64,000 bases of DNA. Source: Macrostomum lignano (lineage: Eukaryota). A program made the translations under genes and the position numbers. The stretch is taken from positions 1-64,000 of the forward strand of contig NIVC01000673.1 of assembly GCA_002269645.1 (NCBI GenBank). The letters are read 5' to 3'. Shown here piece after piece: positions 11,701 to 45,988 of the stretch. The notes under the pieces were generated by a model that had not been told where the DNA came from, did not search any database, and was given only the letters and a program-made list of their open reading frames with translations. Positions within the stretch are counted from its first letter, which is position 1. Every line of letters starts with the position of its first letter.

Positions 11701-14266
11701 TCGGTGTGCCCCCCCCAAAGACAGTCGGTGTGCCCCCCCCAAAGACAGTCGGTGTGCCCCCCCCAAAGACAGTCGGTGTGCCCCCCCCAAAGACAGTCGG
11801 TGTGCCCCCCCAAAGACAGTCGGTGTGCCCCCCCCAAAGACAGTCGGTGTGCCCCCCCCAAAGACAGTCGGTGTGCCCCCCCAAAGACAGTCGGTGTGCC
11901 CCCCCAAAGACAGTCGGTGTGCCCCCCCCAAAGACAGTCGGTGTGCCCCCCCCAAAGACAGTCGGTGTGCCCCCCCCAAAGACAGTCGGTGTGCCCCCCC
12001 CCAAAGACAGTCGGTGTGCCCCCCCCAAAGACAGTCGGTGTGCCCCCCCCAAAGACAGTCGGTGTGCCCCCCCCAAAGACAGTCGGTGTGCCCCCCCCAA
12101 AGACAGTCGGTGTGCCCCCCCCAAAGACAGTCGGTGTGCCCCCCCCAAAGACAGTCGGTGTGCCCCCCCAAAGACAGTCGGTGTGCCCCCCCAAAGACAG
12201 TCGGTGTGCCCCCCCCCCAAAGACAGTCGGTGTGCCCCCCCCCAAAGACAGTCGGTGTGCCCCCCCCAAAGACAGTCGGTGTGCCCCCCCCAAAGACAGT
12301 CGGTGTGCCCCCCCCCAAAGACAGTCGGTGTGCCCCCCCCCCCAAAGACAGTCGGTGTGCCCCCCCCAAAGACAGTCGGTGTGCCCCCCCCAAAGACAGT
12401 CGGTGTGCCCCCCCCCAAAGACAGTCGGTGTGCCCCCCCCCAAAGACAGTCGGTGTGCCCCCCCCAAAGACAGTCGGTGTGCCCCCCCCAAAGACAGTCG
12501 GTGTGCCCCCCCCCAAAGACAGTCGGTGTGCCCCCCCCCCAAAGACAGTCGGTGTGCCCCCCCCAAAGACAGTCGGTGTGCCCCCCCCAAAGACAGTCGG
12601 TGTGCCCCCCCCAAAGACAGTCGGTGTGCCCCCCCAAAGACAGTCGGTGTGCCCCCCCCAAAGACAGTCGGTGTGCCCCCCCCCCAAAGACAGTCGGTGT
12701 GCCCCCCCCCAAAGACAGTCGGTGTGCCCCCCCCAAAGACAGTCGGTGTGCCCCCCCAAAGACAGTCGGTGTGCCCCCCCCAAAGACAGTCGGTGTGCCC
12801 CCCCCAAAGACAGTCGGTGTGCCCCCCCCAAAGACAGTCGGTGTGCCCCCCCCCAAAGACAGTCGGTGTGCCCCCCCCAAAGACAGTCGGTGTGCCCCCC
12901 CAAAGACAGTCGGTGTGCCCCCCCCAAAGACAGTCGGTGTGCCCCCCCCAAAGACAGTCGGTGTGCCCCCCCAAAGACAGTCGGTGTGCCCCCCCCCAAA
13001 GACAGTCGGTGTGCCCCCCCCAAAGACAGTCGGTGTGCCCCCCCCAAAGACAGTCGGTGTGCCCCCCCAAAGACAGTCGGTGTGCCCCCCCCCCAAAGAC
13101 AGTCGGTGTGCCCCCCCCCAAAGACAGTCGGTGTGCCCCCCCCAAAGACAGTCGGTGTGCCCCCCCCAAAGACAGTCGGTGTGCCCCCCCCAAAGACAGT
13201 CGGTGTGCCCCCCCCAAAGACAGTCGGTGTGCCCCCCCCAAAGACAGTCGGTGTGCCCCCCCAAAGACAGTCGGTGTGCCCCCCCCAAAGACAGTCGGTG
13301 TGCCCCCCCCAAAGACAGTCGGTGTGCCCCCCCCAAAGACAGTCGGTGTGCCCCCCCCAAAGACAGTCGGTGTGCCCCCCCCAAAGACAGTCGGTGTGCC
13401 CCCCCCCAAAGACAGTCGGTGTGCCCCCCCCAAAGACAGTCGGTGTGCCCCCCCCAAAGACAGTCGGTGTGCCCCCCCCAAAGACAGTCGGTGTGCCCCC
13501 CCCAAAGACAGTCGGTGTGCCCCCCCCCAAAGACAGTCGGTGTGCCTCCCCCCCCAAAGACAGTCGGTGTGCCCCCCCCCAAAGACAGTCGGTGTGCCCC
13601 CCCCCCCAAAGACAGTCGGTGTGCCCCCCCCCCAAAGACAGTCGGTGTGCCCCCCCCCAAAGACAGTCGGTGTGCCCCCCCCTCAAAGACAGTCGGTGTG
13701 CCCCCCCCCAAAGACAGTCGGTGTGCCCCCCCCCAAAGACAGTCGGTGTGCCCCCCCCCAAAGACAGTCGGTGTGCCCCCCCCCCAAAGACAGTCGGTGT
13801 GCCCCCCCCAAAGACAGTCGGTGTGCCCCCCCCAAAGACAGTCGGTGTGCCCCCCCCAAAGACAGTCGGTGTGCCCCCCCCAAAGACAGTCGGTGTGCCC
13901 CCCCCAAAGACAGTCGGTGTGCCCCCCCCCAAAGACAGTCGGTGTGCCCCCCCAAAGACAGTCGGTGTGCCCCCCAAAGACAGTCGGTGTGCCCCCCCAA
14001 AGACAGTCGGTGTGCCCCCCCAAAGACAGTCGGTGTGCCCCCCCAAAGACAGTCGGTGTGCCCCCCCCCCCAAAGACAGTCGGTGTGCCCCCCCCCAAAG
14101 ACAGTCGGTGTGCCCCCCCCAAAGACAGTCGGTGTGCCCCCCCCCCAAAGACAGTCGGTGTGCCCCCCCCCAAAGACAGTCGGTGTGCCCCCCCCAAAGA
14201 CAGTCGGTGTGCCCCCCCCAAAGACAGTCGGTGTGCCCCCCCAAAGACAGTCGGTGTGCCCCCCCA
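8770..14266. repeat. ~5.5 kb minisatellite, unit AAAGACAGTCGGTGTG(C)6-11 (~23-27 bp)
   Basis: More than 200 tandem units; the unit has no stop codon in any frame, which explains the 1000-1850 aa ORFs on both strands. Confidence 0.99.
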
Positions 14267-18640: not shown

Positions 18641-19614
18641 TCCGGCGCAGCAACTTTGTAAATAGTTTCGTTTTGCTCATGATGAGATCTATTGATGTAT
18701 AGCTTAACTACATGCTGGATAAAGCAATTTCCAAGAACATGAGCCGTGATTGTAGGCCAAAACATTTTTGCTACCATGCGCTCGTATCACTACTTAGTCC
18801 CTTGAGAGTCATATAACTGAGAGAATTTAAGCTAGCTTTTGTATATCGTCCGATGAAGATGCACATGTAGATAATTTTAATTTAGAATTGTCTTCTTTAC
18901 GTTGTTAAAGACTTATTATTAAAGACATTTTCTAAACGTACATCACTTATTAAAGATTACTTTCTTATCACCAGTCTACTGTGCAATAGCAACAGTTTAT
19001 TTATTCACCTCTGCAATTCGAGGTCATGTCTCGAAATAGTCTACGAATGACACGTGCTTTTTCTTCTTAATGTCCAAGAAGCAGCTGACTTGCACCGCTC
19101 GACATCGGCACCTGGAGCTCAGGCTCACAGGGTACGACTCTGTACACATTTCATGGAAAAATGGAAAATCTATCCATTTACATGTACGCCACTGTTCCAT
19201 ATTTCTACATGCTTTTTAGTTGTTTTTGTTATTTTCTATTTTGAAAAGAAAAACGCGGACCCGGTCTATACTGAGAAATCACTTTAAATGCATATGCTGT
19301 CATTGAATTTTTTGTAAATATAGCGTGTAAAATGAGTCGAAGATTAAAATATTATGCTGCGACTAATATTACTTAATTGGCTTCATTGTTTACCTTATGG
19401 CCTTAAAAACCATTTAGCTACGAGTAATAACAGCGTGTTCAGATCCAAACGGAAGTTTTCGACAGGAGTAGGAACGTTTCAAAAAATGGGGGAGCCAGGT
19501 TCAGTGGCGGATTTCGGGGGCACACAGGGCGCACGCCCCCAGTCGAGTTAGATTTTTTAATATGGAAAATGCACATTTTTATGTACCGATTATTTTCAGA
19601 ATCCGTGTTGTCAG

Positions 19615-20787
19615 CACTCATTTTAGCGCCGCAGACACTCTTTTTAGCGCCACAGGAACTCATTTTAGCGCCCCAGGCACTCATTTTAGCGCCGCAGGCA
19701 CTCATCTTAGCGCCGCAGACACTCATTTTAGCGCCACAGGAACTCATTTTAGCGCCACAGGAACTCATTTTAGCGCCACAGGAACTCATTTTAGCGCCCC
19801 AGGAACTCATTTTAGCGCCGCAGGCACTCATTTTAGCGCCACAGGAACTCATTTTAGCGCCCCAGGCACTCATTTTAGCGCTGCAGGCACTCATCTTAGC
19901 GCCACAGGAACTCATTTTAGCGCCCCAGGCACTCATTTTAGCGCTGCAGGCACTCATTTTAGCGCCACAGGAACTCATTTTAGCGCCACAGGAACTCATT
20001 TTAGCGCCACAGGAACTCATTTTAGCGCCCCAGGAACTCATTTTAGCGCCGCAGGCACTCATTTTAGCGCCACAGGAACTCATTTTAGCGCCCCAGGCAC
20101 TCATTTTAGCGCTGCAGGCACTCATCTTAGCGCCACAGGAACTCATTTTAGCGCCCCAGGAACTCATTTTAGCGCTGCAGGCACTCATTTTAGCGCCACA
20201 GGAACTCATTTTAGCGCCCCAGGCACTCATTTTAGCGCCGCAGACACTCATTTTAGCGCCACAGGAACTCATTTTAGCGCCGCAGACACTTATTTTAGCG
20301 CCGCAGGCACTCATTTTAGCGCTGCAGGCACTCATCTTAGCGCCGCAGGCACTCATTTTAGCGCTGCAGGCACTCATTTAGCGCCGCAGGCACTCATTTT
20401 AGCGCCGCAGGCACTCATTTTAGCGCCCCAGGAACTCATTTTAGCGCTGCAGGCACTCATTTTAGCGCCACAGGAACTCATTTTAGCGCTGCAGGCACTC
20501 ATTTTAGCGCCACAGGAACTCATTTTAGCGCCCCAGGCACTCATTTTAGCGCCGCAGACACTCATTTTAGCGCCACAGGAACTCATTTTAGCGCCGCAGA
20601 CACTTATTTTAGCGCCGCAGGCACTCATTTTAGCGCTGCAGGCACTCATCTTAGCGCCGCAGGCACTCATTTTAGCGCTGCAGGCACTCATTTAGCGCCG
20701 CAGGCACTCATTTTAGCGCCGCAGGCACTCATTTTAGCGCCGCAGACACTCATTTTAGCGCCACAGGAACTCATCTTAGCGCCGCAG
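19615..20787. repeat. 21 bp minisatellite (CACTCATTTTAGCGCCGCAGG and variants), ~56 units
   Basis: 7-aa periodicity in all overlapping ORFs; direct reading of the units. Confidence 0.99.
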
Positions 20788-21629
20788 CCGCTTTTTTGTC
20801 GCCCTGCAGCAAAATGCATTCATGCAAAGCAGCAAAAAACAAAAAAAAGCGTATAAAGTAAGCAAAAAGTCTGCTGTTTACATTTAAAATGTGGATGGGC
20901 CAGATACCATTTCTGGGTCTTGGGGAGCAATTGACTCCACTGTCCCCCCGTTCGATCCTAAGTGTATGGTTTGCGAAAATGGTTGTTCACTAGCTATAGC
21001 TACTGTCACAGTCCTCATTGTGCGGAAAACAAAAGTTCCCTGTTTGCATACGTACACACGCGTGCACTTGGAGCCGAGAACTTTCATACCATTTAACAAA
21101 AGCAAAATGTACATATATACGAAAATGTACACGAGGCCCGGCGAGAATTCGTGTGCATCGACATCACGTGATATCATGACTAATCTACGAGCTACATTTA
21201 TATATAACCTTATACAGAATTAGCTTTAATAGTCATACTCTATTTTACAGCTTTACATAGCAAGTGTTAAAACTTAAACCCTTCTAAACTTCCCTAAAAA
21301 TTCACAAACGAGCCATTTAAATTTAGCAGAATTTATATTATATGCAAATTTACATAATTATGGCAGATGAAGGCTTACTACTGGCATGCCCCGAGCGACA
21401 GGTGCCACCGAACGTCGCTCAAATTCACAGTGTGGTTGCAGTGAGCCCACCGACTGGTGAGTCCTGTGTACATGTACCTGCGAATCCTCTGACGAATATG
21501 GTACTGTAAATGTACACTGGGATCTCACCTAACGCATCTCAAAACCCACTATCAAACTCAAACCAAAAGCCCAGAATCTCACATGGAATATATCCACAGT
21601 GGCAGTTGCAAATGCACATATTAGCTTTG

Positions 21630-22630
21630 GTTGGAGAATCTCACTCACTTGCGAATCTCACCAATGAGATCTCACTCACTTTAAAATCTCACACCAATAA
21701 GACCTTAATTACTTGAGAATCTCACACCAATAAAATCTCACTGACTTGAGAATCTCACACCAAAATCTTACTGCATCTCACATAAATGAAATCTCACTCA
21801 CTTAAAAATCTCACACCAATAAGACCTTAATTACTTGAGAATCTCACAACAATAAAGTCTCTCTGACTTGAGAATCTCACACCATTAAAATCTCTCTGAC
21901 TTAAGAATCTCACCAATGAGATCTCACACCAATGAGACCTTAATCACTTAGAATCTCACACCAATAAAATCTCTCTGACTTGAGAATCTCACACCAATGA
22001 AATCTCTGACTTGAGAATCTCACACTAATAGAATCTCTATGACTTGAGAATCTCACACCAATGAAACATCTGACTTGAGAATCTCACACCCATAAAATCC
22101 CTGACTTGAGAATCTCACACCAATAAAATCTCTCTGACTTGAGAATCTCACACCAATGAAATCTCTGACTTGAGAATCTCACACTAATAGAATCTCTATG
22201 ACTTGAGAATCTCACACCAATGAAATCTCACTGACTTGAGAATCTCACACCAATGAAATCTCTGACTTGAGAATCTCACACTAATAGAATCTCTATGACT
22301 TGAGAATCTCACACCAATGAAACATCTGACTTGAGAATCTCACACCCATAAAATCCCTGACTTGAGAATCTCACACCAATAAAATCTCTGACTTGAGAAT
22401 CTCACACCAATGAAATCTCTGACTTGAGAATCTCACACTAATAGAATCTCTATGACTTGAGAATCTCACACCAATGAAATATCTGACTTGAGAATCTCAC
22501 ACCCATAAATTCCCTGACTTGAGAATCTCACACAAATGAAATCTCTCTGACTTGAGAATCTCACACCAACATGAAATCTCTCTGACTTGAGAATCTCACA
22601 ACAATGAAATCTCACTCACTTGAGAATCCA
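21630..22630. repeat. 31-33 bp minisatellite with palindromic core TGAGAATCTCA and pentameric higher-order structure
   Basis: Constant GACTTGAGAATCTCACA plus 14-16 nt related variable parts recurring in order. Confidence 0.95.
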
Positions 22631-24159
22631 GCTCACACCCTTATAAATATGTCGATTGCTTAGGAATCCCACACCATTAGATAACAATCAATTGAATTGA
22701 GAACTTCACAGCATGTGATCTCGATCACTTAAGAATCTCAGCATTAGATCTCAATTCTTAACCCTTAAGAATCGCACACCATATGAGATTTATCTTCAGA
22801 TCTTTATAAAAGTTGTTAATGTTCAAAAGATCCCCAATCTTATTTTTAGTGCATTCAATCAGAATAGTATTTGTGGTGATATTATACATTAAAGTCAGTG
22901 CTATGACATTACATAGTTTTATATTCACATTAGCTAATGCATTGTAAAAATTATGCACTTTGTTTTGCAAGGGTTGCAAATGAACTTTGATCGCTGGAAA
23001 TTGTAATCATTGTTTGTTTAGTATTAAAATTCCATTAGCAGGAATTTTTATCCAATTAGCTAATTTAAATTTCGGGGCGGGGGGTGAGAGGTCCCACTGG
23101 AGCTGCGCCGCTATAGTTAATGATGATTAAATAATTAACGTTAAAAACCGAAGTTAATTAAATAGTATTAAAAAATCTATAAAGATAAAGATACGTTCGG
23201 GAATAAAGATTTAATTGGTCGAATCTTTCGTCTCGCTTTCATGGAGTTCTAGATCCAACATCTGGAGAGTAAACGACTACAGCTATGTGACCATGGGAAA
23301 TAACTAAATGATATAATATCGTTCAGATTCTTTCTTTACTATTTTCGATAATTATTCGTGGTTGTTGGTTATAAATTTCTTAATAAGCAGCTATGAATCA
23401 TTAAAAAATATCCCACTCCAGAGTTCTAGATTTAGAACGCCTGGTCTAAATAAATATCACGTGCGCAGATTTTCACTCTGCGTGTGGCGACATGCGGGAC
23501 GCATGGAGAGCCAAGTTAAGCTGAATTAAGCGAGCCAAGTCGTTAAAAATATATTAATTATGAGCTTATTAAGGATATTTGTGTTTACTTAATTTAAATA
23601 ACACTTTAGCTATATTTTTTACTAACAGAATGCCGGTGTACTTTCAAGTTTTCTTTTCTCTTGAAAATATTTGTTAATCCGCGGCACCACTGGACCCCAT
23701 GGCCTGGCCTATAAATAAAAACCCCTCGCCAGCCGAGCCGAGGGTTTCAGGAAGTTCCACGCGAAGCGTTCTCTACTTTGAGTTTGCTTTTGCAATCGTC
23801 ATCAGCCGAGCAATGCAACATAGCTTTAGCAATACACGGCGCACGATTGATAAGCTTCGACACGTGACCAAAAGGCCTTGCTTTTTAGTAAAAGGTTCGA
23901 AAGAGGTGGATTGAATAACAATATCTTTTACATGCTATATGAGAGAATAAATTTGTTGTCCAATGGGTAGCTGAATAGGGGTTTACAGTGTCTAGTATTT
24001 AGTCATCAATCTTTCAATTGGACCACCCTATTTACGGTCCCACATAGTTCTAACCGTCCTCCTTACCCTAGTCCCTAATGCAAAGCCCACCAACCTCAGC
24101 TTTTTTTATTTAGTCTTTCTTTTCTTTATTATCGATCAGTAGTGTACGATACGTAGTAG

Positions 24160-24600
24160 TGTACAGAAGAATGAAGTAAAAAGTGAGAGGGGGCAAGGGG
24201 CAGGCTGGCGTTGATAAAACTGGGGGGTGGGGTGTCCAGTTAAATTTTGTGTGAGGAGGAGGGAGGAGGGTCATATTATCTACGACCCCTCCCACATTGT
24301 ACACTGACGCCAACCCCAGATATTCGTAGTAAAGTCAAAAGCCAACCAGGCCCCAGGCCCTGGTCGTTCTAATTTTCTTAATCTAGCGTGCATTGAATTT
24401 TTATTCGGTGTACAGAAGAGTAAAGTCGAATGTGGGGTTACGGGGAGCTCTAAGAGATAATAAAATAGTGGGAGGGGAACCCCACCCTGTCTAGAAGGAG
24501 GCTGGCGGGTGAGAAAACTGGTGGCGGTTTGGTTTCAGAGGGAGGGAATAGGGACGCTATATATTAATCTGCAACCCCTCACCCCACACTGTACACTACT
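24160..24600. repeat. Diverged direct duplication (24160-24305 vs 24408-24600)
   Basis: Collinear shared blocks GTGTACAGAAGA, AGGCTGGCG..GA.AAAACTGG, ATATTA..ACCCCTC..CACA.TGTACACT. Confidence 0.55.
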
Positions 24601-24728
24601 GGCTGTACATTAGCAGTCCACACAAGATTTTAAATATTGTCGTTGTCTTTGTAATTAGCCATCCCGCCCCCCACCCCCGGTGGAGGGACTGACCAGGGAG
24701 GGACTTCTGGGACGGAGATAGTATTCCC

Positions 24729-24754
24729 CACAGATACTAAATACTAAATCTGTG
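24729..24754. mobile_element. 26 bp TIR-only DNA-transposon remnant with 8 bp TSD
   Basis: GTATTCCC | CACAGATACTAAATACTAAATCTGTG | GTATTCCC; termini CACAGAT/ATCTGTG. Confidence 0.7.
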
Positions 24755-25729
24755 GTATTCCCTGACTAGGCTATAAAGCAGTGCCCTGCTTGTGCTGGAA
24801 ATCAGGGTCAGGAACTGTTGTTTCTTTCTTGTGTTGTTACTATAGTGCCATTGTGTATCATTCTTCTTGCTGAAATTACATCCGCACTTTAAGACTTTAA
24901 TTCAGGACCTCATGGGGGGGGGCGAATCCCGAATGTGCCAGTACTAAGTAGAATACAATCCTCTGTAGTTGTGTACAAATATGAAAATAGCAGTCATTAA
25001 ATCCCTGTGTTTTGCGTCAAAAATAACTGACATATCTTTGATATTTACAAACTATTTTTGCTATGGCGCCCAAATCCAATTAGAATTAAAACCAGAGCAG
25101 ACTCAATTGCCCTCTTCTGTAAGCCCTCTATTGAAGAAGCCAGTTGACACCGGATTTTCAATCTACTACTTACTTATCGTTATCCTTGACGAAGCAATTT
25201 ACATGGTAATATACCAATTTATAAATAATCAATCGCTGCTTACTACTCTAAGTAGACGATATTGGCTTAATTGCTCGAAGTCGTTTCGAAGCAAGACAAA
25301 TTACTAATTACAATTGCTTATTACTGCAAACTGTAATCTTAATTTTAAATCTGCTTGCTTCATCAAAAAGATTTCGATCAGTTTTCAGTCCTGAATAAAC
25401 CATTTAGAATCCAAAAAATTATGCTTAACTACTAAAAAATCGATCGCAGTCAAATTTCTTTTTGATTGAATTCAAGAATGCAACCGCAACCTATCCACTA
25501 ATTGCCAAGGACCACTACGGTAGCATAACAGGACAGGACGTAAAACTCAAAGATCGTGTAACTTTTAGGAGGCCAATTTCCTGGGAAAATACACTGAGGA
25601 AATAGGTAGAATCATTTATTTATCACGAAATCAATGATTGCAAGCATTTGATACGGGCAAGCGAATATGACAATTTCTTTAATTTATCATGCATACCATG
25701 CTACTCTGCTGTATTTTATATATACTCAG

Positions 25730-25798
25730 CAGTCAGCAACAATGAAAAGTCGCCATCACAGAAGATTCCGTCTGTGGTCGCCACTTTTGAGAGTGCAG
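25730..25798 (+). CDS. Candidate upstream exon of the caspase-like gene
   Basis: Acceptor TATACTCAG, donor GCAG|GTAAAC at 25799 in phase 1, matching the phase-1 acceptor TTTTCCCAG|AT at 26467 (G+AT=Asp). Confidence 0.35.
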
Positions 25799-26467
25799 GT
25801 AAACTCTCTCCTCAATCTTTGCGAGCGACGCAACTCGGCTACTCCGCGGCAGACTTGAGTTGAGGAATGAAGTGGGGGGAGCAGTGTGCGAAGGTTGGAC
25901 GGATTAAAGCTACCCCATCAGTTTTCTCAAATCTTTTATTTTAGTTAGAATAGTCCAAAAGAAATTTCTCACTGGCGCATAAAGTGGCGACTTTTCAATG
26001 TTGCTGAGTATAGCTGTGTGTGAAAGTTTCATTGTCTACACTTATTTATAAGAGCTAACTTTGCCAATGGCCCAATATCATTTTCTACAATGTTGTCTTT
26101 AGAAAGCTATCAATTTTTAAGCATGCCAAAATTTTATTACAAATATACTTAATTCAAGAAGGAGCGAAACAAAAATTTCACTTGTGAGTATTTATAACTT
26201 TTGCTTGGGCTTCTGAAATAAAAAGAAAAATAGAAAACAATACATAAATTAACCTTTCACTACACAACTATATAAAGTAATAGTGTCATATTGTGCATGG
26301 TAAATTAAAGAAATGGTAATCTTCACTGCCCAAGATCAAATGCAATCATTGATTTTGTGATGAACCAGGAAATTGGCCTCCTAATAAATTGCACGATCTT
26401 TGAGTTTTACGTACTGTTATACTACAGTGGTCCTTGCTAATTGCTTCTCTTTCTAAACTTTTCCCAG

Positions 26468-28263
26468 ATGTCGCATTGTCCCAGTTTAACAACGGAGATG
26501 AGCAGCACATGAGCCGTCAAAGCGACCAAACTCTCCCCGGAAGCGAGGGCGCGGAGCTGTGCTCGGACCGGTTCGTGGCCGTCTTTGGCCCGCATCAAAA
26601 CCTGGAAGATTTTAAATTTCTCGAGTGCGCCAACGTCAAGGTGGAATGCGCGAAGACCCTTGACAGCTTTCAACGGGCACTTTCGAAGGTTTTGGCCTCT
26701 CTCACTCCCAAGACCGAGCTTTGGTTCTTCCACCTGCTCCTAGTCGACATTAACAACAGCCTGATCATGGATGGCAAAGCTGTGTCCGAAAATGAAGCTT
26801 ATAAACTAATACACAGCATGGATTTAAGTCGAGTGTCAATTTTCCAATTCGTGCTCCGTTTGCCTGTTGAAGTAGCAAAATTCAATGAGGCAGCGCCATT
26901 CTGGAATAAGTCTCCTCTGGAGGCTCGACAGAGGAGGTGTCGCAGCAGGCGTTCCTCAGCCTGCGGTTGTCTGTCTATTTACAATTTTGATATTGAAAAA
27001 GCAGACGACTGGCCCAGTTTGCTCAACACGCTGTCGGATTTGGTCAGCAGAGCGTCAGTAGAGGCTGATTTTACTGACGAAGAAGCCGCTACAGTTCTAA
27101 GTCAAAGTGGCTGTTTAACTCTGCACCAAGAGTCCGGCTGTCCAGATGGAATAACCGTCAAGCAGCTGGAGCCGCTGCAGAGGGGAAATGATTTTCGACT
27201 GCCAGACGAGAGACAACAGCAGCAGCAGCAGCAACAAAATCAGCAGGAGAACCATGATCCGCTTGGTTTCGAACTCAATCAACAGCCAGTGCAAGCGACG
27301 GAATTCACCGACACAACGCAGCAAGTTGGTGAAAGCGAGGGAATCGGTCTCTCAGATCAAGTTTTGCAGCCGCGAGATGACCAAATGGTTCAGTGGGATT
27401 CGTACAGCTCAGTCTTGAGTCCAGTGACGAGCGTGCCTGAATACCATCTGCATCCGGTGCAGTATGCTCGGAAAAAGAACGCCGCTATTGGTCTGGTTAT
27501 TGAAAAGTACAGATTCTCCGTAGACAACAAATATTATGACGACCGTCTATGCGGCAGTAGCGACAGAAAAATAATTATAAATATTTCAGAACGAATTCTG
27601 TGCCGAAAAGACAATATTCATCTGAATTCTGATCACAGTCACGTATCGAAACACTGCATCAGTACATTTATCCAGCACTTTCTAACTACTTACAAGCAAG
27701 AAGAGAATCTTTTGGAATTGCTGCTCGTGTTCGTTTCGGCCCACGGCAGTCAGGAAGGCATCGTCACATCCGCCGGAGAGGAAATACCGTTAAAAGATCT
27801 GCTGCAGCCGCTGCAGCAGGTGGCGAATCATGTCCTCCTATTTTACCAGCCGTGCCGCGGCTCTCTAGAGCACAGTGTCGGCGCGCCCAAAGTTCCGGAT
27901 GTAAGCGGCTTAAGCTTTCCCGGAAAAGACATGGCCGGTTGCTGCCTGCCAGGGAATGGACTGCAGAATGTCTCGGCCATCTTTGCCAGCATGCCGGGCT
28001 ACGTCAGCTATCGAAGCGACAGCGGAAGCCTGATGCTAGTAGCGGTGCGATCGGTTCTTCAGGATGTCGTTGGCAAGAAGATTAGTCAGAAGCAGCTGGC
28101 CCAGCTCACACAGAGAAAGATTCATACCATGTGGCCGGAAGGTCTGCAGACATCTCAGAAATTTGAATATGCGCAGGTTAACTATGCAGTTAGGCAAGTC
28201 TACCAAATCACTGTAGCAGCTGATTTACCTGTTCATCCTGAAGTTGAAGGCACTGTGCCATGA
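26468..28263 (+). CDS. Caspase-family (peptidase C14A-like) protein with long atypical N-terminal region
   Basis: 1.8 kb open frame. LLVFVSAHG (His at 27742) and LFYQPCRG (Cys at 27853) correspond to caspase SHG and QACRG; SAIFASMPGYVSYRSDSGSLML matches the small-subunit xSTxxGYxSxRxxxxGSxFI. Entry is either the acceptor at 26467 or the ATG at 26509. Confidence 0.88.
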
Positions 28264-30360: not shown

Positions 30361-31113
30361 TCAGTTGAACGGTGACAAGCACTCGGCAAGGGCTCCATCA
30401 AAGGTATACCACGAAGATCTTCCATCATTCAGGCCCGTATAGGCGGCATTTGCGACGACCACATCTTCCAGTCCTCCTGCGTTGTTCGGCTGGTTGAGGT
30501 CCCAGAGGCCGGTGTCGATGGTGGTGTTGCAGCTGGCCCATATCCATCCTCCGGCCGGTTCCTCGCTGCCTGGCAGCTGCCGGCCTCCCAGCAGCACCTT
30601 CGCCAGACCGTCTCGAGCCAAAATTCCTCGAATGTGATGTAGCTCATCATGGTTAGCGCCGTCGGCAAAGATGACGAGGCCCGGTACCGCATCGATGGCA
30701 GCCTTCGCATAGTCCCAGTCCGTGATGTTCGCCATCAGCTTGTACTTGGTGTCGCACAGGTCGTCAGAGAATCCGGCAGGGCACAGAGCTCCGGGCGGTA
30801 GTCCCGGCTGCTGCCTCACGAACACCTGCCCCCTGCGAGTGCAGCCGCAGTCTCCCACGCGCTTACTGCACCTGTTGAAGACAAACAGTTGGCACGGACC
30901 GTCGGCCACGCTGAACGCCTGACAATCAATCTTTAAGTCGCACAGGAAGGCGCATTCCGGAGGCTGCTTCCGTCCTGGGATCGTCTCAACAAACTGTGGC
31001 CTGATGCACAGTGGGACAAAGACTCGATGGTACTTTCTGGGTGTCCTGCAAGCCATCGCATGGAATGTGAAGCAGCCTAGTAGTAGACAGGCAATGCTCA
31101 GGCACGATGGCAT
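30361..31113 (-). CDS. Secreted PAN/apple-like + C-type lectin domain protein, 250 aa, single exon
   Basis: Signal peptide MPSCLSIACLLLGCFTFHAMA; CAFLCDLKIDCQAFSVADGPCQL (PAN-like); CPAGF..YKL..DWDYAK, LLGGRQ..GGWIW, WDLNQPNN..EDV, LND (CTLD). Confidence 0.85.
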   Translation of the reverse strand: MPSCLSIACLLLGCFTFHAMACRTPRKYHRVFVPLCIRPQFVETIPGRKQPPECAFLCDLKIDCQAFSVADGPCQLFVFNRCSKRVGDCGCTRRGQVFVRQQPGLPPGALCPAGFSDDLCDTKYKLMANITDWDYAKAAIDAVPGLVIFADGANHDELHHIRGILARDGLAKVLLGGRQLPGSEEPAGGWIWASCNTTIDTGLWDLNQPNNAGGLEDVVVANAAYTGLNDGRSSWYTFDGALAECLSPFN

Positions 31114-31646: not shown

Positions 31647-31667
31647 GTCTCTGTCTGTCTGTCTGTC

Positions 31668-31717
<50 letters not shown>

Positions 31718-31733
31718 TGTCTGTCTGTCTGTC

Positions 31734-31801
<68 letters not shown>

Positions 31802-31827
31802 TGTCTGTCTGTGTGTGTGTGTGTGTG

Positions 31828-31866
<39 letters not shown>

Positions 31867-31867
31867 G

Positions 31868-31904
<37 letters not shown>

Positions 31905-31915
31905 GGCTGTCTGTC

Positions 31916-31961
<46 letters not shown>

Positions 31962-31977
31962 TGTCTGTCTGTCTGTC

Positions 31978-32043
<66 letters not shown>

Positions 32044-32051
32044 TGTCTGTG

Positions 32052-32116
<65 letters not shown>

Positions 32117-32119
32117 GGC

Positions 32120-32182
<63 letters not shown>

Positions 32183-32199
32183 GTGTCTGTCTGTCTGTG

Positions 32200-32254
<55 letters not shown>

Positions 32255-32301
32255 GTCTGTGTCTGTCTGTCTGTATTAGTGTCTGTCTGTCTGTCTGTCT
32301 G
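31647..32301. repeat. Compound (GT)n/(GTCT)n microsatellite
   Basis: Alternating di- and tetranucleotide tracts. Confidence 0.99.
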
Positions 32302-32573: not shown

Positions 32574-38075
<5,502 letters not shown>

Positions 38076-38215
38076 GGCAACAGCGACTTCGGCTTCGGAT
38101 TTTGACTGCTAATGGAAGATTAAAGTAAATATTTGTTTAAGTAGCCTTTAAGTAGTTTAAGTAGTTTTTGTTTGAAAATAAAATTATCAGTCTTTGTTTG
38201 AAATGAGAGACAGTC

Positions 38216-39033
38216 CTTGTTTGAATCTGGAATCAGAGTCCTTGTTTGAATCTGGAATCAGAGTCTTTGTTTGAATCTGGAATCAGAGTCTTTGTTTGAA
38301 TCTGGAATCAGAGTCTTTGTTTGAATCTGGAATCAGAGTCTTTGTTTGAATCTGGTATCAGAGTCTTTGTTTGAATCTGGTATCAGAGTCTTTGTTTGAA
38401 TCTGGTATCAGAGTCTTTGTTTGAATCTGGAATCAGAGTCTTTGTTTGAATCTGGAATCAGAGTCTTTGTTTGAATCTGGAATCAGAGTCTTTGTTTGAA
38501 TCTGGAATCAGAGTCTTTGTTTGAATCTGGAATCAGAGTCTTTGTTTGAATCTGGAATCAGAGTCTTTGTTTGAATCTGGAATCAGAGTCTTTGTTTGAA
38601 TCTGGTATCAGAGTCTTTGTTTGAATCTGGTATCAGAGTCTTTGTTTGAATCTGGAATCAGAGTCTTTGTTTGAATCTGGAATCAGAGTCTTTGTTTGAA
38701 TCTGGAATCAGAGTCTATGTTTGAATCTGGTATCAGAGTCTTTGTTTGAATCTGGAATCAGAGTCTTTGTTTGAATCTGGAATCAGAGTCTGTGTTTGAA
38801 TCTGGAATCAGAGTATTTGTTTGAATCTGGAATCAGAGTCTGTGTTTGAATCTGGAATCAGAGTCTTTGTTTGAATCTGGAATCAGAGTCTTTATTTGAA
38901 TCTGGAATCAGAGTCTATGTTTGAATCTGGAATCAGAGTCTTTGTTTGAATCTGGAATCAGAGTCTTTGTTTGAATCTGGAATCAGAGTCTTTGTTTGAA
39001 TCTGGAATCAGAGTCTTTGTTTGAATCTGGAAT
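38216..39033. repeat. 25 bp minisatellite (TTTGTTTGAATCTGGAATCAGAGTC)
   Basis: About 32 units. Confidence 0.99.
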
Positions 39034-39738
39034 CCGAATCTTCATTTGAGAGAGAAATGAAGCACTGAAATTAGTTGTGCTGTTTTGTAGGCAAATGAAA
39101 CACAATGCCAGCAGTTATTGCTGTAAAAATATTCACCCGCTGCTAAAAGTACACAGAATTTAATTGATTTCGAAGGCAGAAATTTTCCTGTTATTTCAAA
39201 TTAGGGAGGAAGCACCTGTTTGAATGACAGAGAAGTGTCCAATATTTAGAAAAAATAAAAGATGAAACAATCTGAAAAAAACGTAAGTATCTCTTCTACC
39301 TAAAAATTGAATAATCTGTTTAATCGACTCGTCATAGCTGATGAAAACAAAAAATGTGCCAACAAAAACACCTGAAGAGGAGAGAGGCGCTGCACTGGCA
39401 CGGAATTGAAGTCGAGGAAGCTGCGAGCAGAAGTGACTCTGAAAAAATGGATTTCAGTCATGGAAAAGCCACCTTCCACAGCTAATTGATGGGCTGTGAA
39501 GCGGGGCAAGGCAAATTACAGGGGCAGAGCGGAAGGCCAGTGGGGAGATATTGATTGGGCCTCGGCTGAACAATAATCGTGCCAAAGGAACAGGAGACTT
39601 GAGAGAAAAAAGTTACTTTTTACAACTGTCATAAAATTTTTACTAGCTAGCTTAACTCAACTAAAAGTACCAAGTTCAAAAGTCCTTGGAGCTCTATACT
39701 ATTATTTCCAGCTAATAGCTTTCAATGTCAGCTGGGAC

Positions 39739-39903: not shown

Positions 39904-39922
39904 GTTGGGACTGACGTGTGAT

Positions 39923-41795
39923 AGATTAGCAATCCATTCTATTCCTTCATCAGTGATGCTGGCTAGATTAGCAATCCATTCTATTCCTTCATCAGTGATG
40001 TTGGCTAGATTAGCAATCCATTCTATTCCTTCATCTGTGATGTTGGCTAGATTAGCAATCCATTCTATTCCTTCATCGGTGATGCTGGCTAGATTAGCAA
40101 TCCATTCTATTCCTTCATCTGTGATGTTGGCTAGATTAGCAATCCATTCTATTCCTTCATCAGTGATGTTGGCTAGATTAGCAATCCATTCTATTCCTTC
40201 ATCAGTGATGCTGGCTAGATTAGCAATCCATTCTATTCCTTCATCAGTGATGCTGGCTAGATTAGCAATCCATTCTATTCCTTCATCAGTGATGTTGGCT
40301 AGATTAGCAATCCATTCTATTTCTTCATCAGTGATGTTGGCTAGATTAGCAATCCATTCTATTCCTTCATCAGTGATGTTGGCTAGATTAGCAATCCATT
40401 CTATTCCTTCATCAGTGATGCTGGCCAGATTAGCAATCCATTCTATTCCTTCATCAGTGATGCTGGCCAGATTAGCAATCCATTCTATTCCTGCATCAGT
40501 GATGTTGGCTAGATTAGCAATCCATTCTATTCCTTCATCAGTGATGTTGGCTAGATTAGCAATCCATTCTATTCCTTCATCATTGATGCTGGCTAGATTA
40601 GCAATCCACTCTATTCCTTCATCAGTGATGCTGGCTAGATTAGCAATCCATTCTATTCCTTCATCAGTGATGTTGGCTAGATTAGCAATCCATTCTATTC
40701 CTTCATCAGTGATGTTGGCTAGATTAGCAATCCATTCTATTCCTTCATCTGTGATGTTGGCTAGATTAGCAATCCATTCTATTCCTTCATCAGTGATGTT
40801 GGCTAGATTAGCAATCCACTCTATTCCTTCATCAGTGATGCTGGCTAGATTAGCAATCCATTCTATTCCTTCATCAGTGATGTTGGCTAGATTAGCAATC
40901 CATTCTATTCCTTCATCAGTGATGTTGGCTAGATTAGCAATCCATTCTATTCCTTCATCAGTGATGCTGGCTTGATTAGCAATCCATTCTATTCCTTCAT
41001 CAGTGATGCTGGCTAGATTAGCAATCCATTCTATTCCTTCATCAGTGATGCTGGCTAGATTAGCAATCCATTCTATTCCTTCATCAGTGATGCTGGCTAG
41101 ATTAGCAATCCATTCTATTCCTTCATCAGTGATGTTGGCTAGATTAGCAATCCATTCTATTCCTTCATCAGTGATGCTGGCTAGATTAGCAATCCATTCT
41201 ATTCCTTCATCAGTGATGCTGGCCAGATTAGCAATCCATTCTATTCCTTCATCAGTGATGCTGGCTAGATTAGCAATCCATTCTATTCCTTCATCAGTGA
41301 TGTTGGCTAGATTAGCAATCCATTCTATTCCTTCATCAGTGATGCTGGCTAGATTAGCAATCCACTCTATTCCTTCATCAGTGATGCTGGCCAGATTAGC
41401 AATCCATTCTATTCCTTCATCAGTGATGCTGGCCAGATTAGCAATCCATTCTATTCCTGCATCAGTGATGTTGGCTAGATTAGCAATCCATTCTATTCCT
41501 TCATCAGTGATGTTGGCTAGATTAGCAATCCATTCTATTCCTTCATCAGTGATGTTGGCTAGATTAGCAATCCATTCTATTCCTTCATCAGTGATGCTGG
41601 CTTGATTAGCAATCCATTCTATTCCTTCATCAGTGATGCTGGCTAGATTAGCAATCCATTCTATTCCTTCATCAGTGATGCTGGCTAGATTAGCAATCCA
41701 TTCTATTCCTTCATCAGTGATGTTGGCTAGATTAGCAATCCATTCTATTCCTTCATCAGTGATGCTGGCTAGATTAGCAATCCATTCTATTCCTG
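39923..41795. repeat. 42 bp minisatellite (GGCTAGATTAGCAATCCATTCTATTCCTTCATCAGTGATGYT)
   Basis: About 44 units; 14-aa periodic ORFs. Confidence 0.99.
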
Positions 41796-42399: not shown

Positions 42400-43046
42400 A
42401 AAAAGGGAGACAGTAGAGGGTAGAAGGGAGATTGTAGAGGGTAGAGGGTAGAGGGTAGAGGGTAGAGGAGAGATTGTAGAGCGTAGAGGGTAGAGGGGAG
42501 ATTGTAGAGGGTAGAGGGTAGAGGGTAGAGGGTAGAGGGGAGATTGTAGAGGGTAGAGGGTAGAGGAGAGATTGTAGAGGGTAGAGGGTAGAGGGTAGAG
42601 GGTAGAGGGGAGAGGGGAGATTGTAGAGGGTAGAGGGTAAAGTGTAGAGGAGAGATTGTAGAGGGTAGAGGGTAGAGGAGAGATTGTAGAGGGTAGAGGG
42701 TAGAGGGTAGAGGGTAGAGGGTAGAGGGGAGATTGTAGAGGGTAGAGGGTAGAGGGTAGAGGAGAGATTGTAGAGGGTAGAGGGTAGAGGAGAGATTGTA
42801 GAGGGTAGAGGGTAGAGGGGAGATTGTAGAGGGTAGAGGGTAGAGGGTAGAGGAGAGATTGTAGAGGGTAGAGGGTAGAGGGTAGAGGGTAAAGGGTAGA
42901 GGGGAGATTGTAGAGGGTAGAGGGTAGAGGGTAGAGGAGAGATTGTAGAGGGTAGAGGGTAGAGGAGAGATTGTAGAGGGTAGAGGGTAGAGGAGAGATT
43001 GTAGAGGGTAGAGGGTAGAGGGGAGATTGTAGAGGGTAGAGGGTAG
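42400..43046. repeat. Purine-rich (GTAGAGG)n / GGAGAGATT compound repeat
   Basis: Direct reading. Confidence 0.95.
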
Positions 43047-43728
43047 AAGACAGAGGGTGGAGGGGAGAGGCAGATCAGACCCAGTGAGCTAGTTTTATAT
43101 TTGGAGAAGAGATGCGACAAGCAAAATGCAGTGAATTCTGTTACTTCACCCAGTATCTGTGCTGTCTAACAAAATTAAATAAAAATTTAAAATTTAAACA
43201 TACAGCAAAATCTTCATAAAAGCCAAGAATAATTAAAAGATTGACATTTGTGTTTACATCCAACTTACGTTAAGTTTTTGGACGATATTCGACCAGTTCG
43301 AGAATATTATTTTGGCCCGAGGCGAAAGCCACAGAAACGGCAGGTGTTAAGCCAGGGAAGGAGAATGTGTTGAAAGGAAGCAAAAATAACTGCAGAGCTG
43401 GATGGGGGGTTGGGAAAAAGGGGAGATGGGAGGGAGGCTGGCAGTTAGGAGTGGCTGATTGGGGGGAGCGCTGGATGGCAGGAGACACGTGGGCGGCAAA
43501 ACCCGGCACAAAAGCAGCAAAAAAAGATTTCAAAGAGACATGCTGAGGCTCTTGTTTTTGTCTCAACTGGCCGTCGCTGAAGCATCCGGGCGGAAGGCAG
43601 ACAGGGACTCAGGGGGGAGAAGGAAATGAGGAAATTGGGAGCTGAGGCAAGAAATGGAATGGGAAGTGCCACTGACTGTCCTTCTTGCCATTTTCAGTTG
43701 GAATGGGAAAATTGGGGATGCAGTGACC

Positions 43729-45065: not shown

Positions 45066-45589
45066 AGGAGGCAAGCAAGGAGGTTCCCTGTCGTGATGTC
45101 ACCCTGCCCTGATCCCTAATCCCTATCACTGCGTATATTCTCCCAACAGTGTCACTCCAGTCAGCTACCCCAGTGGTCTCTCCTTCTGCATACTTTTTAT
45201 CTCGATCCACCCGCTGCCCTTTTCAATTACTTCTCGGATCCTAGAGAAGAGTTCGGCCGTCTCCCCGGGCCCTTAGTGAACACATCGATTTTTTAGCCCA
45301 GCAGTTCTCCCCTGGGAGCTGGTAGCCAAGCTAAACTGTCTCGCAAGCTTTCACTCAAAATCAGATCAGCGCCGCACGCAACGGCTTCAGGGGCCGCGCA
45401 GCTGCGTTAGATTCCCACCAAGATTTGTTATTTTGCGTGCTCGACTGCTGTCTGGTTGTTTACACGAACCGGTGAATCTCTGCTACTTGGCTCTGCTGTC
45501 CATCATGGGTCTTTGCGTACTTGCTGCAAACGAAAAATTGCTTTCAAAATTAACAAAATGCTATTTGAGGTATTTGGGTTTTGCCGTTT

Positions 45590-45678
45590 TAGTTAGTTAA
45601 TTAATTAGTTTGTTAGTTAGTTAGTTAGTTAGTTAGTTAGTCAGCTAGTTAGTCAGTTAGTTAGTCAGATAGTTAGTC

Positions 45679-45709
<31 letters not shown>

Positions 45710-45737
45710 CAGTCAGTTAGTTAGTTAGTTAGTTAGT

Positions 45738-45783
<46 letters not shown>

Positions 45784-45846
45784 CTTACTTAGTTAGTTAG
45801 TTAGTTAGTCAGCTAGTTAGTCAGTTAGTTAGTCAGCTAGTTAGTC

Positions 45847-45906
<60 letters not shown>

Positions 45907-45957: not shown

Positions 45958-45988
<31 letters not shown>

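What the first reader, a model, noticed from the sequence alone, without database searches (positions are those of the whole stretch)
26563..28263. Caspase apparently fused to a second, catalytically dead caspase-like fold
Seen: the C-terminal domain keeps the dyad (SAHG, QPCRG) and probable Asp-pocket residues (R in DRLCGS, Q before PC, R in SYR), with Pro replacing Ala in QACRG. The N-terminal ~160 aa are not CARD/DED-like but echo the caspase alpha/beta order: EDFKFLECANVKVECAKTLDSFQRAL (like F..LGF.V...LT..EI...L), WFFHLLLVD..LIMDGKAVS (like VILSHG..I.GxDG..V), SIFQFVLR (like LFFIQACR), CLSIYN..PSLLNTL (small-subunit-like), lacking His-Gly and Cys. A Gln-rich ~130 aa linker joins them. Inference: a single-chain pseudocaspase-caspase tandem, like a fused cFLIP/caspase-8 pair or the pseudo+active arrangement of separase/CHAT proteases; I know of no such described animal caspase. 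The N-terminal assignment is by eye only.
Basis: partly seen in the sequence, partly recalled or inferred. Interest (0 to 1): 0.75.

Follow-up and report, generated by a model that had tools for sequence, protein, structure and literature searches.

The report
Flatworm caspase with dead caspase-like prodomain
This is a real, mis-annotated gene of the flatworm Macrostomum lignano that encodes a very divergent but apparently active caspase, and its long N-terminal "prodomain" is predicted to be a second caspase-like fold without catalytic residues, an unusual built-in pseudo-enzyme/enzyme pairing.

Summary
A 609-codon ORF (26434-28263, +) is the large second exon of a two-exon gene: exon 1 21360-21456, a 5-kb intron, exon 2 26468-28263, giving 630 aa. 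The window is Macrostomum lignano. The public model A0A1I8IIH9 matches the N-terminal part exactly but truncates the gene with a frame-shifting 68-nt intron.

The C-terminal ~250 aa are a caspase domain:
- The sequence alone misses Pfam, but five of its six M. lignano paralogue hits pass the Peptidase_C14 threshold.
- The family profile hits caspase-3/-7/CED-3 (E 1e-10).
- The AF2 model matches procaspase-7 (E 1e-8).
- His (SAHG), Cys (QPCRG) and the Arg/Gln/Arg S1 pocket are in place.

The N-terminal ~185 aa domain has no sequence-level match to anything (Pfam, PDB profile, hhalign against its own caspase domain). It is conserved in at least two paralogues. AF2 (pLDDT 76, pTM 0.75) gives a caspase-order fold, and its best Foldseek hits in two libraries are caspases, metacaspases and paracaspases (CED-3, prob 0.99, TM 0.53, E 4e-3). 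It has no His-Gly or Cys at the catalytic strand ends.

A disordered, Gln-rich linker of ~120 aa joins the two domains. Two-CASc caspases are already listed for mussels, so I rate this a new variant of a known kind.

The parts
21360..21456 (+). Coding exon 1 (MADEGLLLACPERQVPPNVAQIHSVVAVSPPT + first base of an Asp codon). An alternative in-frame ATG lies at 21342.
   Evidence: The sequence shows ATG...ACTG|gtgagt. The spliced translation matches public M. lignano proteins P0012 (100%) and P0001.
21457..26467 (+). Intron 1 (5011 nt, GT..AG). It contains a 31-nt minisatellite (21638-22628) and a foldback inverted repeat (25533-25705 / 26282-26417).
26468..28263 (+). Coding exon 2, one continuous reading frame through to the TGA stop. 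It encodes both domains and the linker.
   Evidence: A polyadenylation-like hexamer lies at 28364.
26560..27114 (+). N-terminal pseudo-caspase-like domain (spliced residues ~64-248). Predicted order: b1 FVAVFGP, b2 VKVEC, a2 LDSFQRALSKVLA, b3 ELWFFHLLLV, hairpin, a3, b4 VSIFQFVLRL, disordered loop, b5 CLSIYNF, a4, a5.
   Evidence: AF2 on the domain alone: pLDDT 75.8, pTM 0.75. Foldseek top hits are CED-3, caspase-3/-7, MALT1 and metacaspase-9 and viral caspase-like proteins. The domain is conserved in paralogues P0002 and P0009.
26937..27004 (+). 68-nt GT..AG segment that the public gene models remove as an intron. Removal shifts the frame and stops the protein 20 codons later (209-215 aa product). 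Here it is read as coding (CRSRRSSACGCLSIYNFDIEKAD, which includes strand b5 of the N-domain).
   Evidence: The equivalent segment is coding in paralogues P0002 and P0009.
27115..27471 (+). Gln-rich linker predicted to be disordered (~120 aa, 23 Gln, Q8 run).
   Evidence: pLDDT 21-35 in the full-length AF2 model. Length and sequence vary between paralogues.
27472..28227 (+). C-terminal caspase (Peptidase C14A) domain.
   Evidence: Family profile against PDB: caspase-3 E 1.4e-10, caspase-7, CED-3. The paralogues that cover this domain pass Pfam PF00656. AF2 core pLDDT is 80-89. Foldseek matches procaspase-7 at 1.3e-8.
27538..27564 (+). DDRLCGSSD. Its Arg aligns with caspase-3 Arg64 (S1 pocket).
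   Evidence: Alignments.
27736..27747 (+). SAHG, the catalytic His (equivalent to caspase-3 His121).
   Evidence: The His is invariant in the family.
27847..27861 (+). QPCRG, holding the catalytic Cys (caspase-3 Cys163) and the S1 Gln (Gln161). Pro replaces the usual Ala; paralogues have QACRG or HACRG.
27856..27945 (+). Inter-subunit (L2-like) loop, predicted disordered, with candidate Asp cleavage sites VPD|V and GKD|M.
   Evidence: pLDDT below 50 for residues 463-492 of the model. Paralogues also carry Asp-rich loops here.
27997..28014 (+). GYVSYR. Its Arg aligns with caspase-3 Arg207 (S1 pocket).

Best explanation
The locus is a two-exon Macrostomum lignano gene for a 630-aa, lineage-specific caspase.

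Shown:
- The C-terminal ~250 aa are a very divergent member of the caspase family (closest solved relatives are caspase-3/-7 and CED-3).
- That domain has an intact His/Cys dyad and the Arg-Gln-Arg Asp-binding pocket.
- The N-terminal ~185 aa are a conserved, folded domain. In this copy and in paralogue P0002 both domains lie in one uninterrupted reading frame.

Predicted:
- The N-domain adopts the caspase (clan CD) alpha/beta fold. It has the same strand/helix order as the catalytic domain, including a disordered loop where caspases have the inter-subunit linker.
- It has no His-Gly after strand 3 and no Cys after strand 4, so it should be inactive.

Inferred:
- The gene arose by duplication or fusion of caspase units, followed by decay of the upstream copy.
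- The protein works as an Asp-directed cysteine protease.
- Its prodomain is a pseudo-protease instead of a CARD or DED, tethered by a ~120-aa flexible Gln-rich linker.
- The prodomain regulates the enzyme. It could act as a dimerisation partner in cis or in trans (cFLIP-L-like), or as a docking or inhibitory module that is removed by cleavage in the linker.
For: Gene model and organism:
-. P0012 (A0A1I8IIH9) is identical to the window over exon 1 plus the N-terminal part.

Caspase domain:
- Five of the six paralogue hits pass Pfam PF00656; the sixth, P0001, covers only the N-terminal part.
- The family profile hits caspase-3 at E 1.4e-10, with the R64/H121/Q161/C163/R207 equivalents aligned.
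- AF2 core pLDDT is 80-89. Foldseek matches procaspase-7 at 1.3e-8.

N-domain:
- It is conserved at 22-25% identity in P0002 and P0009, with nine invariant positions.
- Its HMM finds it in the continuous ORFs of the window and of L002.
- AF2 on the domain alone gives pLDDT 75.8 and pTM 0.75.
- In the PDB Foldseek search, every hit with probability >=0.8 is a caspase, metacaspase or paracaspase, and 33 of the top 50 are. The best is CED-3 (prob 0.99, TMq 0.53), against TMq ~0.25-0.3 for receiver-type domains.
- The independent viral library again returns proteins named caspase or metacaspase.
- The only local hhalign match between the N and C profiles (IMDGKAVSENEAYKLI..SIFQ with TSAGEEIPLKDLLQPL..VLLFY) is in the register expected for strand 3/helix 3/strand 4.

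Single-chain architecture:
- The window exon 2 and paralogue P0002 (a single exon, which translates to the query) both carry the two domains in one frame.
Against: - No sequence-level evidence links the N-domain to caspases: hhalign prob 0.65%, P 0.09; no Pfam hit; no PDB profile hit; N and C HMMs do not cross-hit.
- The AF2 alignment has only 4 rows (Neff ~2). The five models range from pLDDT 48 to 76.
- In the full-length run, the second half of the N-domain fell below pLDDT 50.
- Foldseek E-values are only 1e-3 to 1e-2.
- The N-domain lacks clear equivalents of caspase helix 1 and of the dimer-interface strand 6.
- The window protein itself does not reach any Pfam or PDB sequence threshold.
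- Pro precedes the catalytic Cys, and the effect of this is unknown.
- Public models splice out 68 nt and truncate the protein.
- No expression or activity data were available.
- Inter-domain contacts could not be assessed (pTM 0.43, no PAE).
Confidence: 0.6

Rival explanations
1. The C-terminal caspase is real, but the N-terminal domain is an unrelated, generic three-layer alpha/beta (flavodoxin- or receiver-like) prodomain. On this reading the caspase resemblance is convergence, or a bias of AlphaFold given a four-sequence alignment.
For: There is no significant profile-profile or HMM similarity to caspases. Foldseek E-values are weak and some receiver-domain hits appear in the list. The domain is shorter than a caspase and lacks helix 1 and strand 6. 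Confidence in its second half is low in the full-length run.
Against: Receiver-type hits have much lower probability (0.2-0.66) and TM (0.24-0.29) than the caspase-fold hits (0.9-0.99, 0.50-0.55). A second library independently returns caspase-like proteins. The element order, including a hairpin after strand 3 and a disordered loop after strand 4, mirrors the C-domain.
Confidence: 0.25
2. The locus makes only the short product of the public annotation (about 209-215 aa, N-domain truncated before strand 5). The 68-nt segment 26937-27004 would be a genuine intron, and the downstream caspase reading frame would be untranslated and a very young pseudogene remnant.
For: Two public models from paralogous loci (P0001, P0012) use this GT..AG splice. 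Short introns of about 100-150 nt occur in the paralogue gene in L001. No full-length protein for this locus is in the protein collections.
Against: About 420 further codons stay open in frame with all catalytic and S1 residues intact. The supposed intron encodes a segment that is coding in paralogues P0002 and P0009. It also forms strand 5 of the predicted N-domain. Splicing would leave a fold fragment. P0002 has the full architecture in one exon. Identical splices in two ab initio models are not independent evidence.
Confidence: 0.12
3. The two domains are made as one chain but act independently. On this reading the N-domain is simply a removable prodomain or scaffold-binding module with no caspase-type pairing to the catalytic domain, and the enzyme is activated by homodimerisation like other caspases.
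For: A ~120-aa disordered linker separates the domains. The N-domain lacks an obvious strand 6, which forms the canonical caspase dimer interface. The paralogue clade P0007/P0011 has the caspase domain without any N-domain, so the catalytic domain can exist without it.
Against: Nothing here speaks directly against it. It is a sub-case of the best explanation that differs only in how the prodomain acts.
Confidence: 0.4

Closest known systems
Effector-type caspases (caspase-3/-7, CED-3; MEROPS C14A, Pfam PF00656)
   Same: The C-terminal domain aligns over ~190 positions with caspase-3. It keeps the SHG His, QxCRG Cys, Arg/Gln/Arg S1 pocket and GS(W) motif region, and an Asp-containing inter-subunit loop. 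The predicted fold matches procaspase-7.
   Different: It is so divergent that the single sequence misses Pfam, PDB and all non-Macrostomum proteins among 1.84 billion representatives. It has QPCRG instead of QACRG. It has a ~370-aa N-terminal extension, where effector caspases have a short prodomain.
cFLIP-L / procaspase-8 (pseudo-caspase paired with an active caspase)
   Same: An inactive caspase-fold unit lacking the catalytic residues is combined with an active caspase unit. cFLIP-L activates and re-targets caspase-8 by heterodimerisation (PMC11121540, PMC7586951).
   Different: In vertebrates these are two genes and two chains, brought together by tandem DEDs on FADD. cFLIP-L is clearly recognisable as a caspase by sequence. 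Here both units are in one chain, there are no death folds, the pseudo unit is unrecognisable by sequence, and pairing is untested.
Separase (pseudo-protease domain followed by the active caspase-like protease domain) and the A/B subdomains of gingipain R
   Same: A single polypeptide carries a degenerate clan-CD-like unit N-terminal to the active one (established structural knowledge, not tested here).
   Different: In those enzymes the two units are tightly packed with no long linker, and they belong to other families (C50, C25). Here a ~120-aa disordered Gln-rich linker separates the units and the active unit is a true C14A caspase.
Two-CASc-domain caspases catalogued in the mussel Mytilus coruscus
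   Same: These are animal caspase gene models with a duplicated caspase domain in one protein. [quoted passage not shown]
   Different: In the mussel both domains are recognisable by SMART/ScanProsite, and they are uncharacterised gene models. In the flatworm family the N-terminal unit is detectable only by predicted structure and lacks catalytic residues.
Unusual-prodomain caspases of lophotrochozoans (ANK-caspases of parasitic flatworms; kinase-prodomain caspase of M. lignano)
   Same: These are lineage-specific replacements of CARD/DED prodomains in Platyhelminthes (PMC11463336).
   Different: That survey states that no other unexpected prodomain was detected in platyhelminths. This family was not reported, probably because neither its prodomain nor, for this copy, its caspase domain reaches Pfam thresholds.

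Membership tests
Caspase family (Peptidase C14A, Pfam PF00656) - C-terminal domain | Significant match to the family profile | tested here: met
   The window protein alone gives no Pfam hit even at E<=10. Paralogues P0002-P0007 (29-37% identical) all pass the PF00656 gathering score. The family profile that includes the window sequence hits caspase-3 at E 1.4e-10, plus caspase-7 and CED-3. Membership therefore rests on transitive and profile evidence.
Caspase family (Peptidase C14A) - C-terminal domain | Catalytic His (SHG) after strand 3 and Cys (QACxG) after strand 4 | tested here: met
   SAHG (27736-27747) and QPCRG (27847-27861) align with caspase-3 H121 and C163. His, Cys, Arg and Gly are invariant across the five family members.
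Caspase family (Peptidase C14A) - C-terminal domain | Arg-Gln-Arg S1 pocket for Asp | tested here: met
   The Arg of DDRLCGSSD, the Gln of QPCRG and the Arg of GYVSYR fall on caspase-3 R64, Q161 and R207 in the profile alignment. Actual Asp specificity was not measured.
Caspase family (Peptidase C14A) - C-terminal domain | Caspase fold | tested here: met
   AF2 core pLDDT is 80-89. Foldseek against PDB gives 201 hits at E<=1e-3, and the top 50 are caspases or MALT1.
Caspase family (Peptidase C14A) - C-terminal domain | Asp-directed proteolytic activity and autoprocessing | not testable with these tools
   This needs recombinant protein and a Cys-to-Ala control.
Pseudo-caspase (inactive caspase-fold unit, cFLIP-L-like) - N-terminal domain | Caspase (clan CD) fold | tested here: inconclusive
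   The AF2 model has pLDDT 75.8 and pTM 0.75 from a 4-sequence alignment. The best PDB matches are CED-3, caspase-3/-7, MALT1 and metacaspase-9 (prob 0.9-0.99, TMq 0.50-0.55, E 4e-3 to 5e-2). BFVD returns caspase-like viral proteins. The evidence favours the fold, but it is prediction only, with modest statistics.
Pseudo-caspase - N-terminal domain | Sequence homology to caspases | tested here: not met
   hhalign of the N-profile against the C-profile gives prob 0.65%, E 0.088. The global mode is uninformative. The PDB profile search gives 0 hits at E<=10. Pfam gives none. The HMMs do not cross-hit.
Pseudo-caspase - N-terminal domain | Loss of the catalytic dyad | tested here: met
   By position of the predicted elements, strand 3 ends ...HLLLVDINN (no His-Gly) and strand 4 ends ...FQFVLRLPVE (no Cys). 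Paralogues have YLQCP or FQLCV after strand 4 but no His after strand 3. This mapping uses secondary-structure register, not a residue-level superposition.
Pseudo-caspase - N-terminal domain | Pairs with an active caspase unit through the caspase dimer interface | not testable with these tools
   The full-length model has pTM 0.43 and no PAE or coordinates were returned. No multimer prediction was available.
Death-fold prodomain caspases (CARD/DED initiators) | CARD or DED in the prodomain | tested here: not met
   There are no Pfam death-fold hits. The predicted N-domain is alpha/beta, not a six-helix bundle.

The most novel reading that the evidence does not exclude
This would be a self-contained 'cis cFLIP/caspase-8'. 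The dead N-terminal caspase fold would dock on the active C-terminal caspase domain of the same chain, or of a partner chain, through the caspase dimer surface. A flatworm lineage that has lost the FADD/DED machinery would then activate or gate a caspase without any death-fold platform. Alternative use of the 68-nt intron might yield a short regulatory isoform analogous to cFLIP-S.
Probability: 0.15. Interest if true: 0.8.

Novelty: new variant of a known kind. Interest (0 to 1): 0.55.

Why it matters
Caspases are normally switched on by death-fold prodomains (CARD, DED) that bring them to adaptor platforms. The known pseudo-caspase regulators (cFLIP-L, caspase-12) are separate proteins.

This finding points to a flatworm-specific caspase family whose prodomain is itself a decayed caspase fold. 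That would be a natural single-chain pseudo-enzyme/enzyme pair. It would give a new solution for caspase regulation in a regeneration model organism, M. lignano, in which platyhelminth extrinsic-pathway components are reported missing.

It also shows that domain surveys based on Pfam or SMART miss this family. The public gene model for this locus truncates the protein before the protease domain.

Tried and rejected
- Single-sequence searches of the ORF against Pfam, PDB and the word-indexed 5.8-billion protein set found nothing.
- Two further word-index searches, with the full-length alignment and with the N-domain alignment, returned only P0001. In the two searches that included the linker the poly-Q words probably swamped the candidate list; why the N-domain-only search also missed paralogues known to be in the collection is unexplained. 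These are weak negatives.
- The exhaustive HMMER search found only 7 proteins, all from M. lignano.
- hhalign of the N-profile against the C-profile, local and global, was not significant.
- The N-domain profile gave no hit against PDB and no meaningful match against Pfam; its only Pfam hit was Androglobin_V at E 0.082 in one paralogue.
- HMM scans of six-frame translations of the window and of two paralogue loci found no extra N-domain or caspase copies in the window. They found no N-domain upstream of the tandem paralogue P0007.
- A transposon origin was considered. There are no terminal repeats around the gene, only a foldback repeat inside the intron.
- CARD, DED and TIR prodomains were rejected. 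There are no death-fold or TIR Pfam hits, the predicted alpha/beta fold excludes CARD and DED, and no TIR protein appears among the listed Foldseek matches.
- A chance ORF was rejected on its length, the conserved paralogues and the catalytic motifs.
Full report
**What is there.** The reported interval lies inside a 609-codon open reading frame, 26434-28263 on the + strand. This is the only long non-repetitive ORF for kilobases around. The other very long "ORFs" in the window are artefacts of minisatellite arrays.
- Just inside the ORF there is a polypyrimidine/AG acceptor (ttttcccag|AT at 26467/26468).
- Five kilobases upstream there is a short exon, ATG at 21360 to ACTG|gtgagt at 21456.
- Joining the two gives a 630-aa protein in frame.
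- The join is confirmed by two public proteins of the flatworm Macrostomum lignano. P0012 (UniRef A0A1I8IIH9) is identical to the window over exon 1 and the first ~190 residues of exon 2. P0001 (A0A1I8IPE0) is 92% identical.

The window is therefore M. lignano DNA. Neighbouring genes fit an animal genome: a rhodopsin-type GPCR, a BING4/WD40 protein, SUEL-lectin/CUB fragments and a tRNA-Leu.

**The public annotation is truncated.** Both public models remove a 68-nt GT..AG segment (26937-27004). That shifts the frame and stops the protein 20 codons later, at 209-215 aa. I read this segment as coding, for four reasons:
- About 420 further codons remain open and encode an intact caspase domain.
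- The equivalent segment is coding in the paralogues P0002 and P0009.
- It forms a predicted core strand of the N-terminal domain.
- Paralogue P0002 has the whole architecture in one uninterrupted exon.

The full-length protein for this locus is not in the protein collections searched. Whether the 68-nt splice is ever used needs RNA data.

**The C-terminal domain is a caspase.** The sequence alone reaches no threshold in Pfam or in PDB sequences. The evidence comes from relatives and profiles:
- An exhaustive HMMER scan of 1.84 billion representative proteins found seven relatives, all from M. lignano.
- The six that cover the C-terminal half (29-37% identity) all pass the Pfam Peptidase_C14 gathering score.
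- A profile of the five family caspase domains hits caspase-3 (E 1.4e-10), caspase-7 and CED-3 in the PDB.
- In that alignment the Arg of DDRLCGSSD, His of SAHG, Gln and Cys of QPCRG and Arg of GYVSYR fall on caspase-3 R64, H121, Q161, C163 and R207. These are the dyad and the Asp-binding S1 pocket.
- The AF2 model of exon 2 has a core pLDDT of 80-89 here, with a disordered loop after the Cys where caspases have the inter-subunit linker.
- Foldseek places it with procaspase-7, Sf-caspase-1, caspase-3/-8/-9 and CED-3 (best E 1.3e-8).

Pro in QPCRG is peculiar to this copy; paralogues have QACRG or HACRG.

**The N-terminal domain.** Residues ~64-248 have no sequence-level relative outside the family:
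- No Pfam hit.
- No PDB hit with a family profile at E<=10.
- No further proteins from a profile search of the word-indexed database.
- Profile-profile comparison with the family's own caspase domain is not significant (probability 0.65%, P 0.09).
- HMMs of the two domains do not cross-hit.

The domain is nevertheless real and constrained. It is present in paralogues P0002 and P0009 at 22-25% identity, with nine invariant positions.

AF2 on the domain alone (four sequences) gives mean pLDDT 75.8 and pTM 0.75. The element order is strand, strand, helix, strand, hairpin, helix, strand, disordered loop, strand, helix, helix. The C-terminal domain has the same order, apart from a missing long first helix and a missing last strand.

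Foldseek results for this model:
- Against the PDB the top matches are CED-3 (prob 0.99, TMq 0.53, E 3.8e-3), zebrafish and human caspase-3, caspase-7, caspase-4, MALT1 and metacaspase-9.
- Every hit with probability >=0.8 is a clan-CD protease, and 33 of the top 50 are.
- Receiver-type domains score TMq 0.24-0.29.
- The viral library independently returns proteins named caspase, executioner caspase or metacaspase.

By the register of the predicted elements, there is no His-Gly at the end of strand 3 (…HLLLVDINN) and no Cys at the end of strand 4 (…FQFVLRLPVE). The unit should therefore be inactive.

It still rests on one shallow-alignment model and modest Foldseek statistics, so I put the caspase-like fold at roughly two in three.

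**Linker and family.** The two domains are joined by ~120 residues with 23 Gln (a Q8 run) and pLDDT 21-35. The linker differs in length and sequence between paralogues.

The family seems restricted to Macrostomum in the data available. It includes:
- tandem genes (P0007 and P0009 on one contig);
- a single-exon copy nested antisense in an IP3-receptor intron;
- a clade (P0007/P0011) with the caspase domain but no N-domain.

Tandem caspase genes make a read-through fusion, followed by decay of the upstream unit, a plausible origin. This is inference.

**How it most likely works.**
- Shown: one chain carries a conserved N-domain, a disordered linker and a caspase domain with all catalytic and S1 residues.
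- Predicted: the N-domain has a caspase-like fold without a dyad.
- Inferred: the protein is an Asp-directed cysteine protease whose prodomain is a pseudo-protease rather than a CARD or DED.
- Possible prodomain roles: a pairing partner for the catalytic domain (as cFLIP-L does for caspase-8; PMC11121540, PMC7586951), or a docking or inhibitory module released by cleavage in the linker or at VPD|V / GKD|M in the inter-subunit loop.

The absence of an obvious strand 6, the very long linker, and the existence of N-domain-less paralogues argue that canonical cis-dimerisation is far from certain. It could not be tested here (pTM 0.43, no PAE).

**Comparison with what is known.**
- The catalytic half is a divergent member of the caspase family.
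- The architecture resembles cFLIP-L/caspase-8, but in one chain and without DEDs. It also resembles separase and gingipain, which have a degenerate unit before the active unit, but those are packed together and belong to other families.
- The closest precedent in animals is the note that four Mytilus coruscus caspases contain two CASc domains (PMC10967218), where both domains are recognisable by sequence.
- A recent survey of lophotrochozoan caspases reported only a kinase-prodomain caspase as unusual in M. lignano, and no other unexpected prodomain in platyhelminths (PMC11463336). This family appears undescribed.

**Verdict.**
- It is a new variant of a known kind, of moderate interest.
- It would become considerably more interesting if a cis pseudo-caspase/caspase interface or a short regulatory isoform were demonstrated.

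Noticed in passing
window 8785-14265, 19614-20787, 33926-34352, 36499-37525, 38212-39049, 39922-41794, 42413-43070, 43720-45065, 47334-48100, 48676-50260, 51168-52696, 54883-55701: The density of long minisatellite arrays is extraordinary (units of 17-42 nt, up to 225 copies; the 5.5-kb array at 8785-14265 is 67% GC). They generate huge spurious ORFs in all six frames. Long (CTAT)n, (TCTG)n and (TTAG)n tracts lie at 7704-8100, 31650-32301 and 45589-46274.
   Followed up: partly
window 25533-25705 and 26282-26417: A foldback or MITE-like inverted repeat (nested arms of 32 nt at 91% and 73 nt at 73% complementarity, ~0.9 kb overall) sits inside the caspase gene's intron. It ends about 50 nt before the exon-2 acceptor.
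   Followed up: no
window 21638-22628: A 31-nt (also 64- and 95-nt periodic) minisatellite lies inside intron 1 of the caspase gene.
   Followed up: no
window 26937-27004: The public UniProt/WormBase-type models (A0A1I8IIH9, A0A1I8IPE0) remove this 68-nt GT..AG segment. That frameshifts the gene and loses the entire caspase domain. This is either a mis-annotation or a short regulatory isoform.
   Followed up: partly
window 6166-6245 (+): tRNA-Leu gene, anticodon TAG (Rfam 62 bits; ARAGORN).
   Followed up: yes
window ~32930-33874 and ~37450-38004 (-): Two exons of a rhodopsin-family GPCR (7tm_1, E ~1e-16 each), apparently one gene. Minisatellites (36499-37525) and a (TCTG)n tract lie in or next to the coding region.
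   Followed up: partly
window 52742-53965 (-): A 407-aa ORF with WD40 repeats and a BING4CT (NUC141) domain (E 1e-23), i.e. a UTP7/WDR46-like nucleolar protein. The opposite and shifted frames are also open because of high GC.
   Followed up: partly
window 494-1532 (-): Adjacent ORFs with weak SUEL-lectin (E 1e-5) and CUB (E 0.02) matches. They are probably exons of a secreted lectin/CUB protein.
   Followed up: no
window 30361-31113 (-): A 250-aa Cys-rich ORF with a hydrophobic N-terminus (signal-peptide-like) and no Pfam match. It lies 2 kb downstream of the caspase gene on the other strand.
   Followed up: no
L002 8001-9629; L001 2069-4342 and 10001-11910: Paralogue P0002 is a single-exon gene nested antisense within a gene for an IP3/ryanodine-receptor-type channel. 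Paralogues P0007 (no N-domain) and P0009 (with N-domain) are tandem neighbours 5.6 kb apart.
   Followed up: partly
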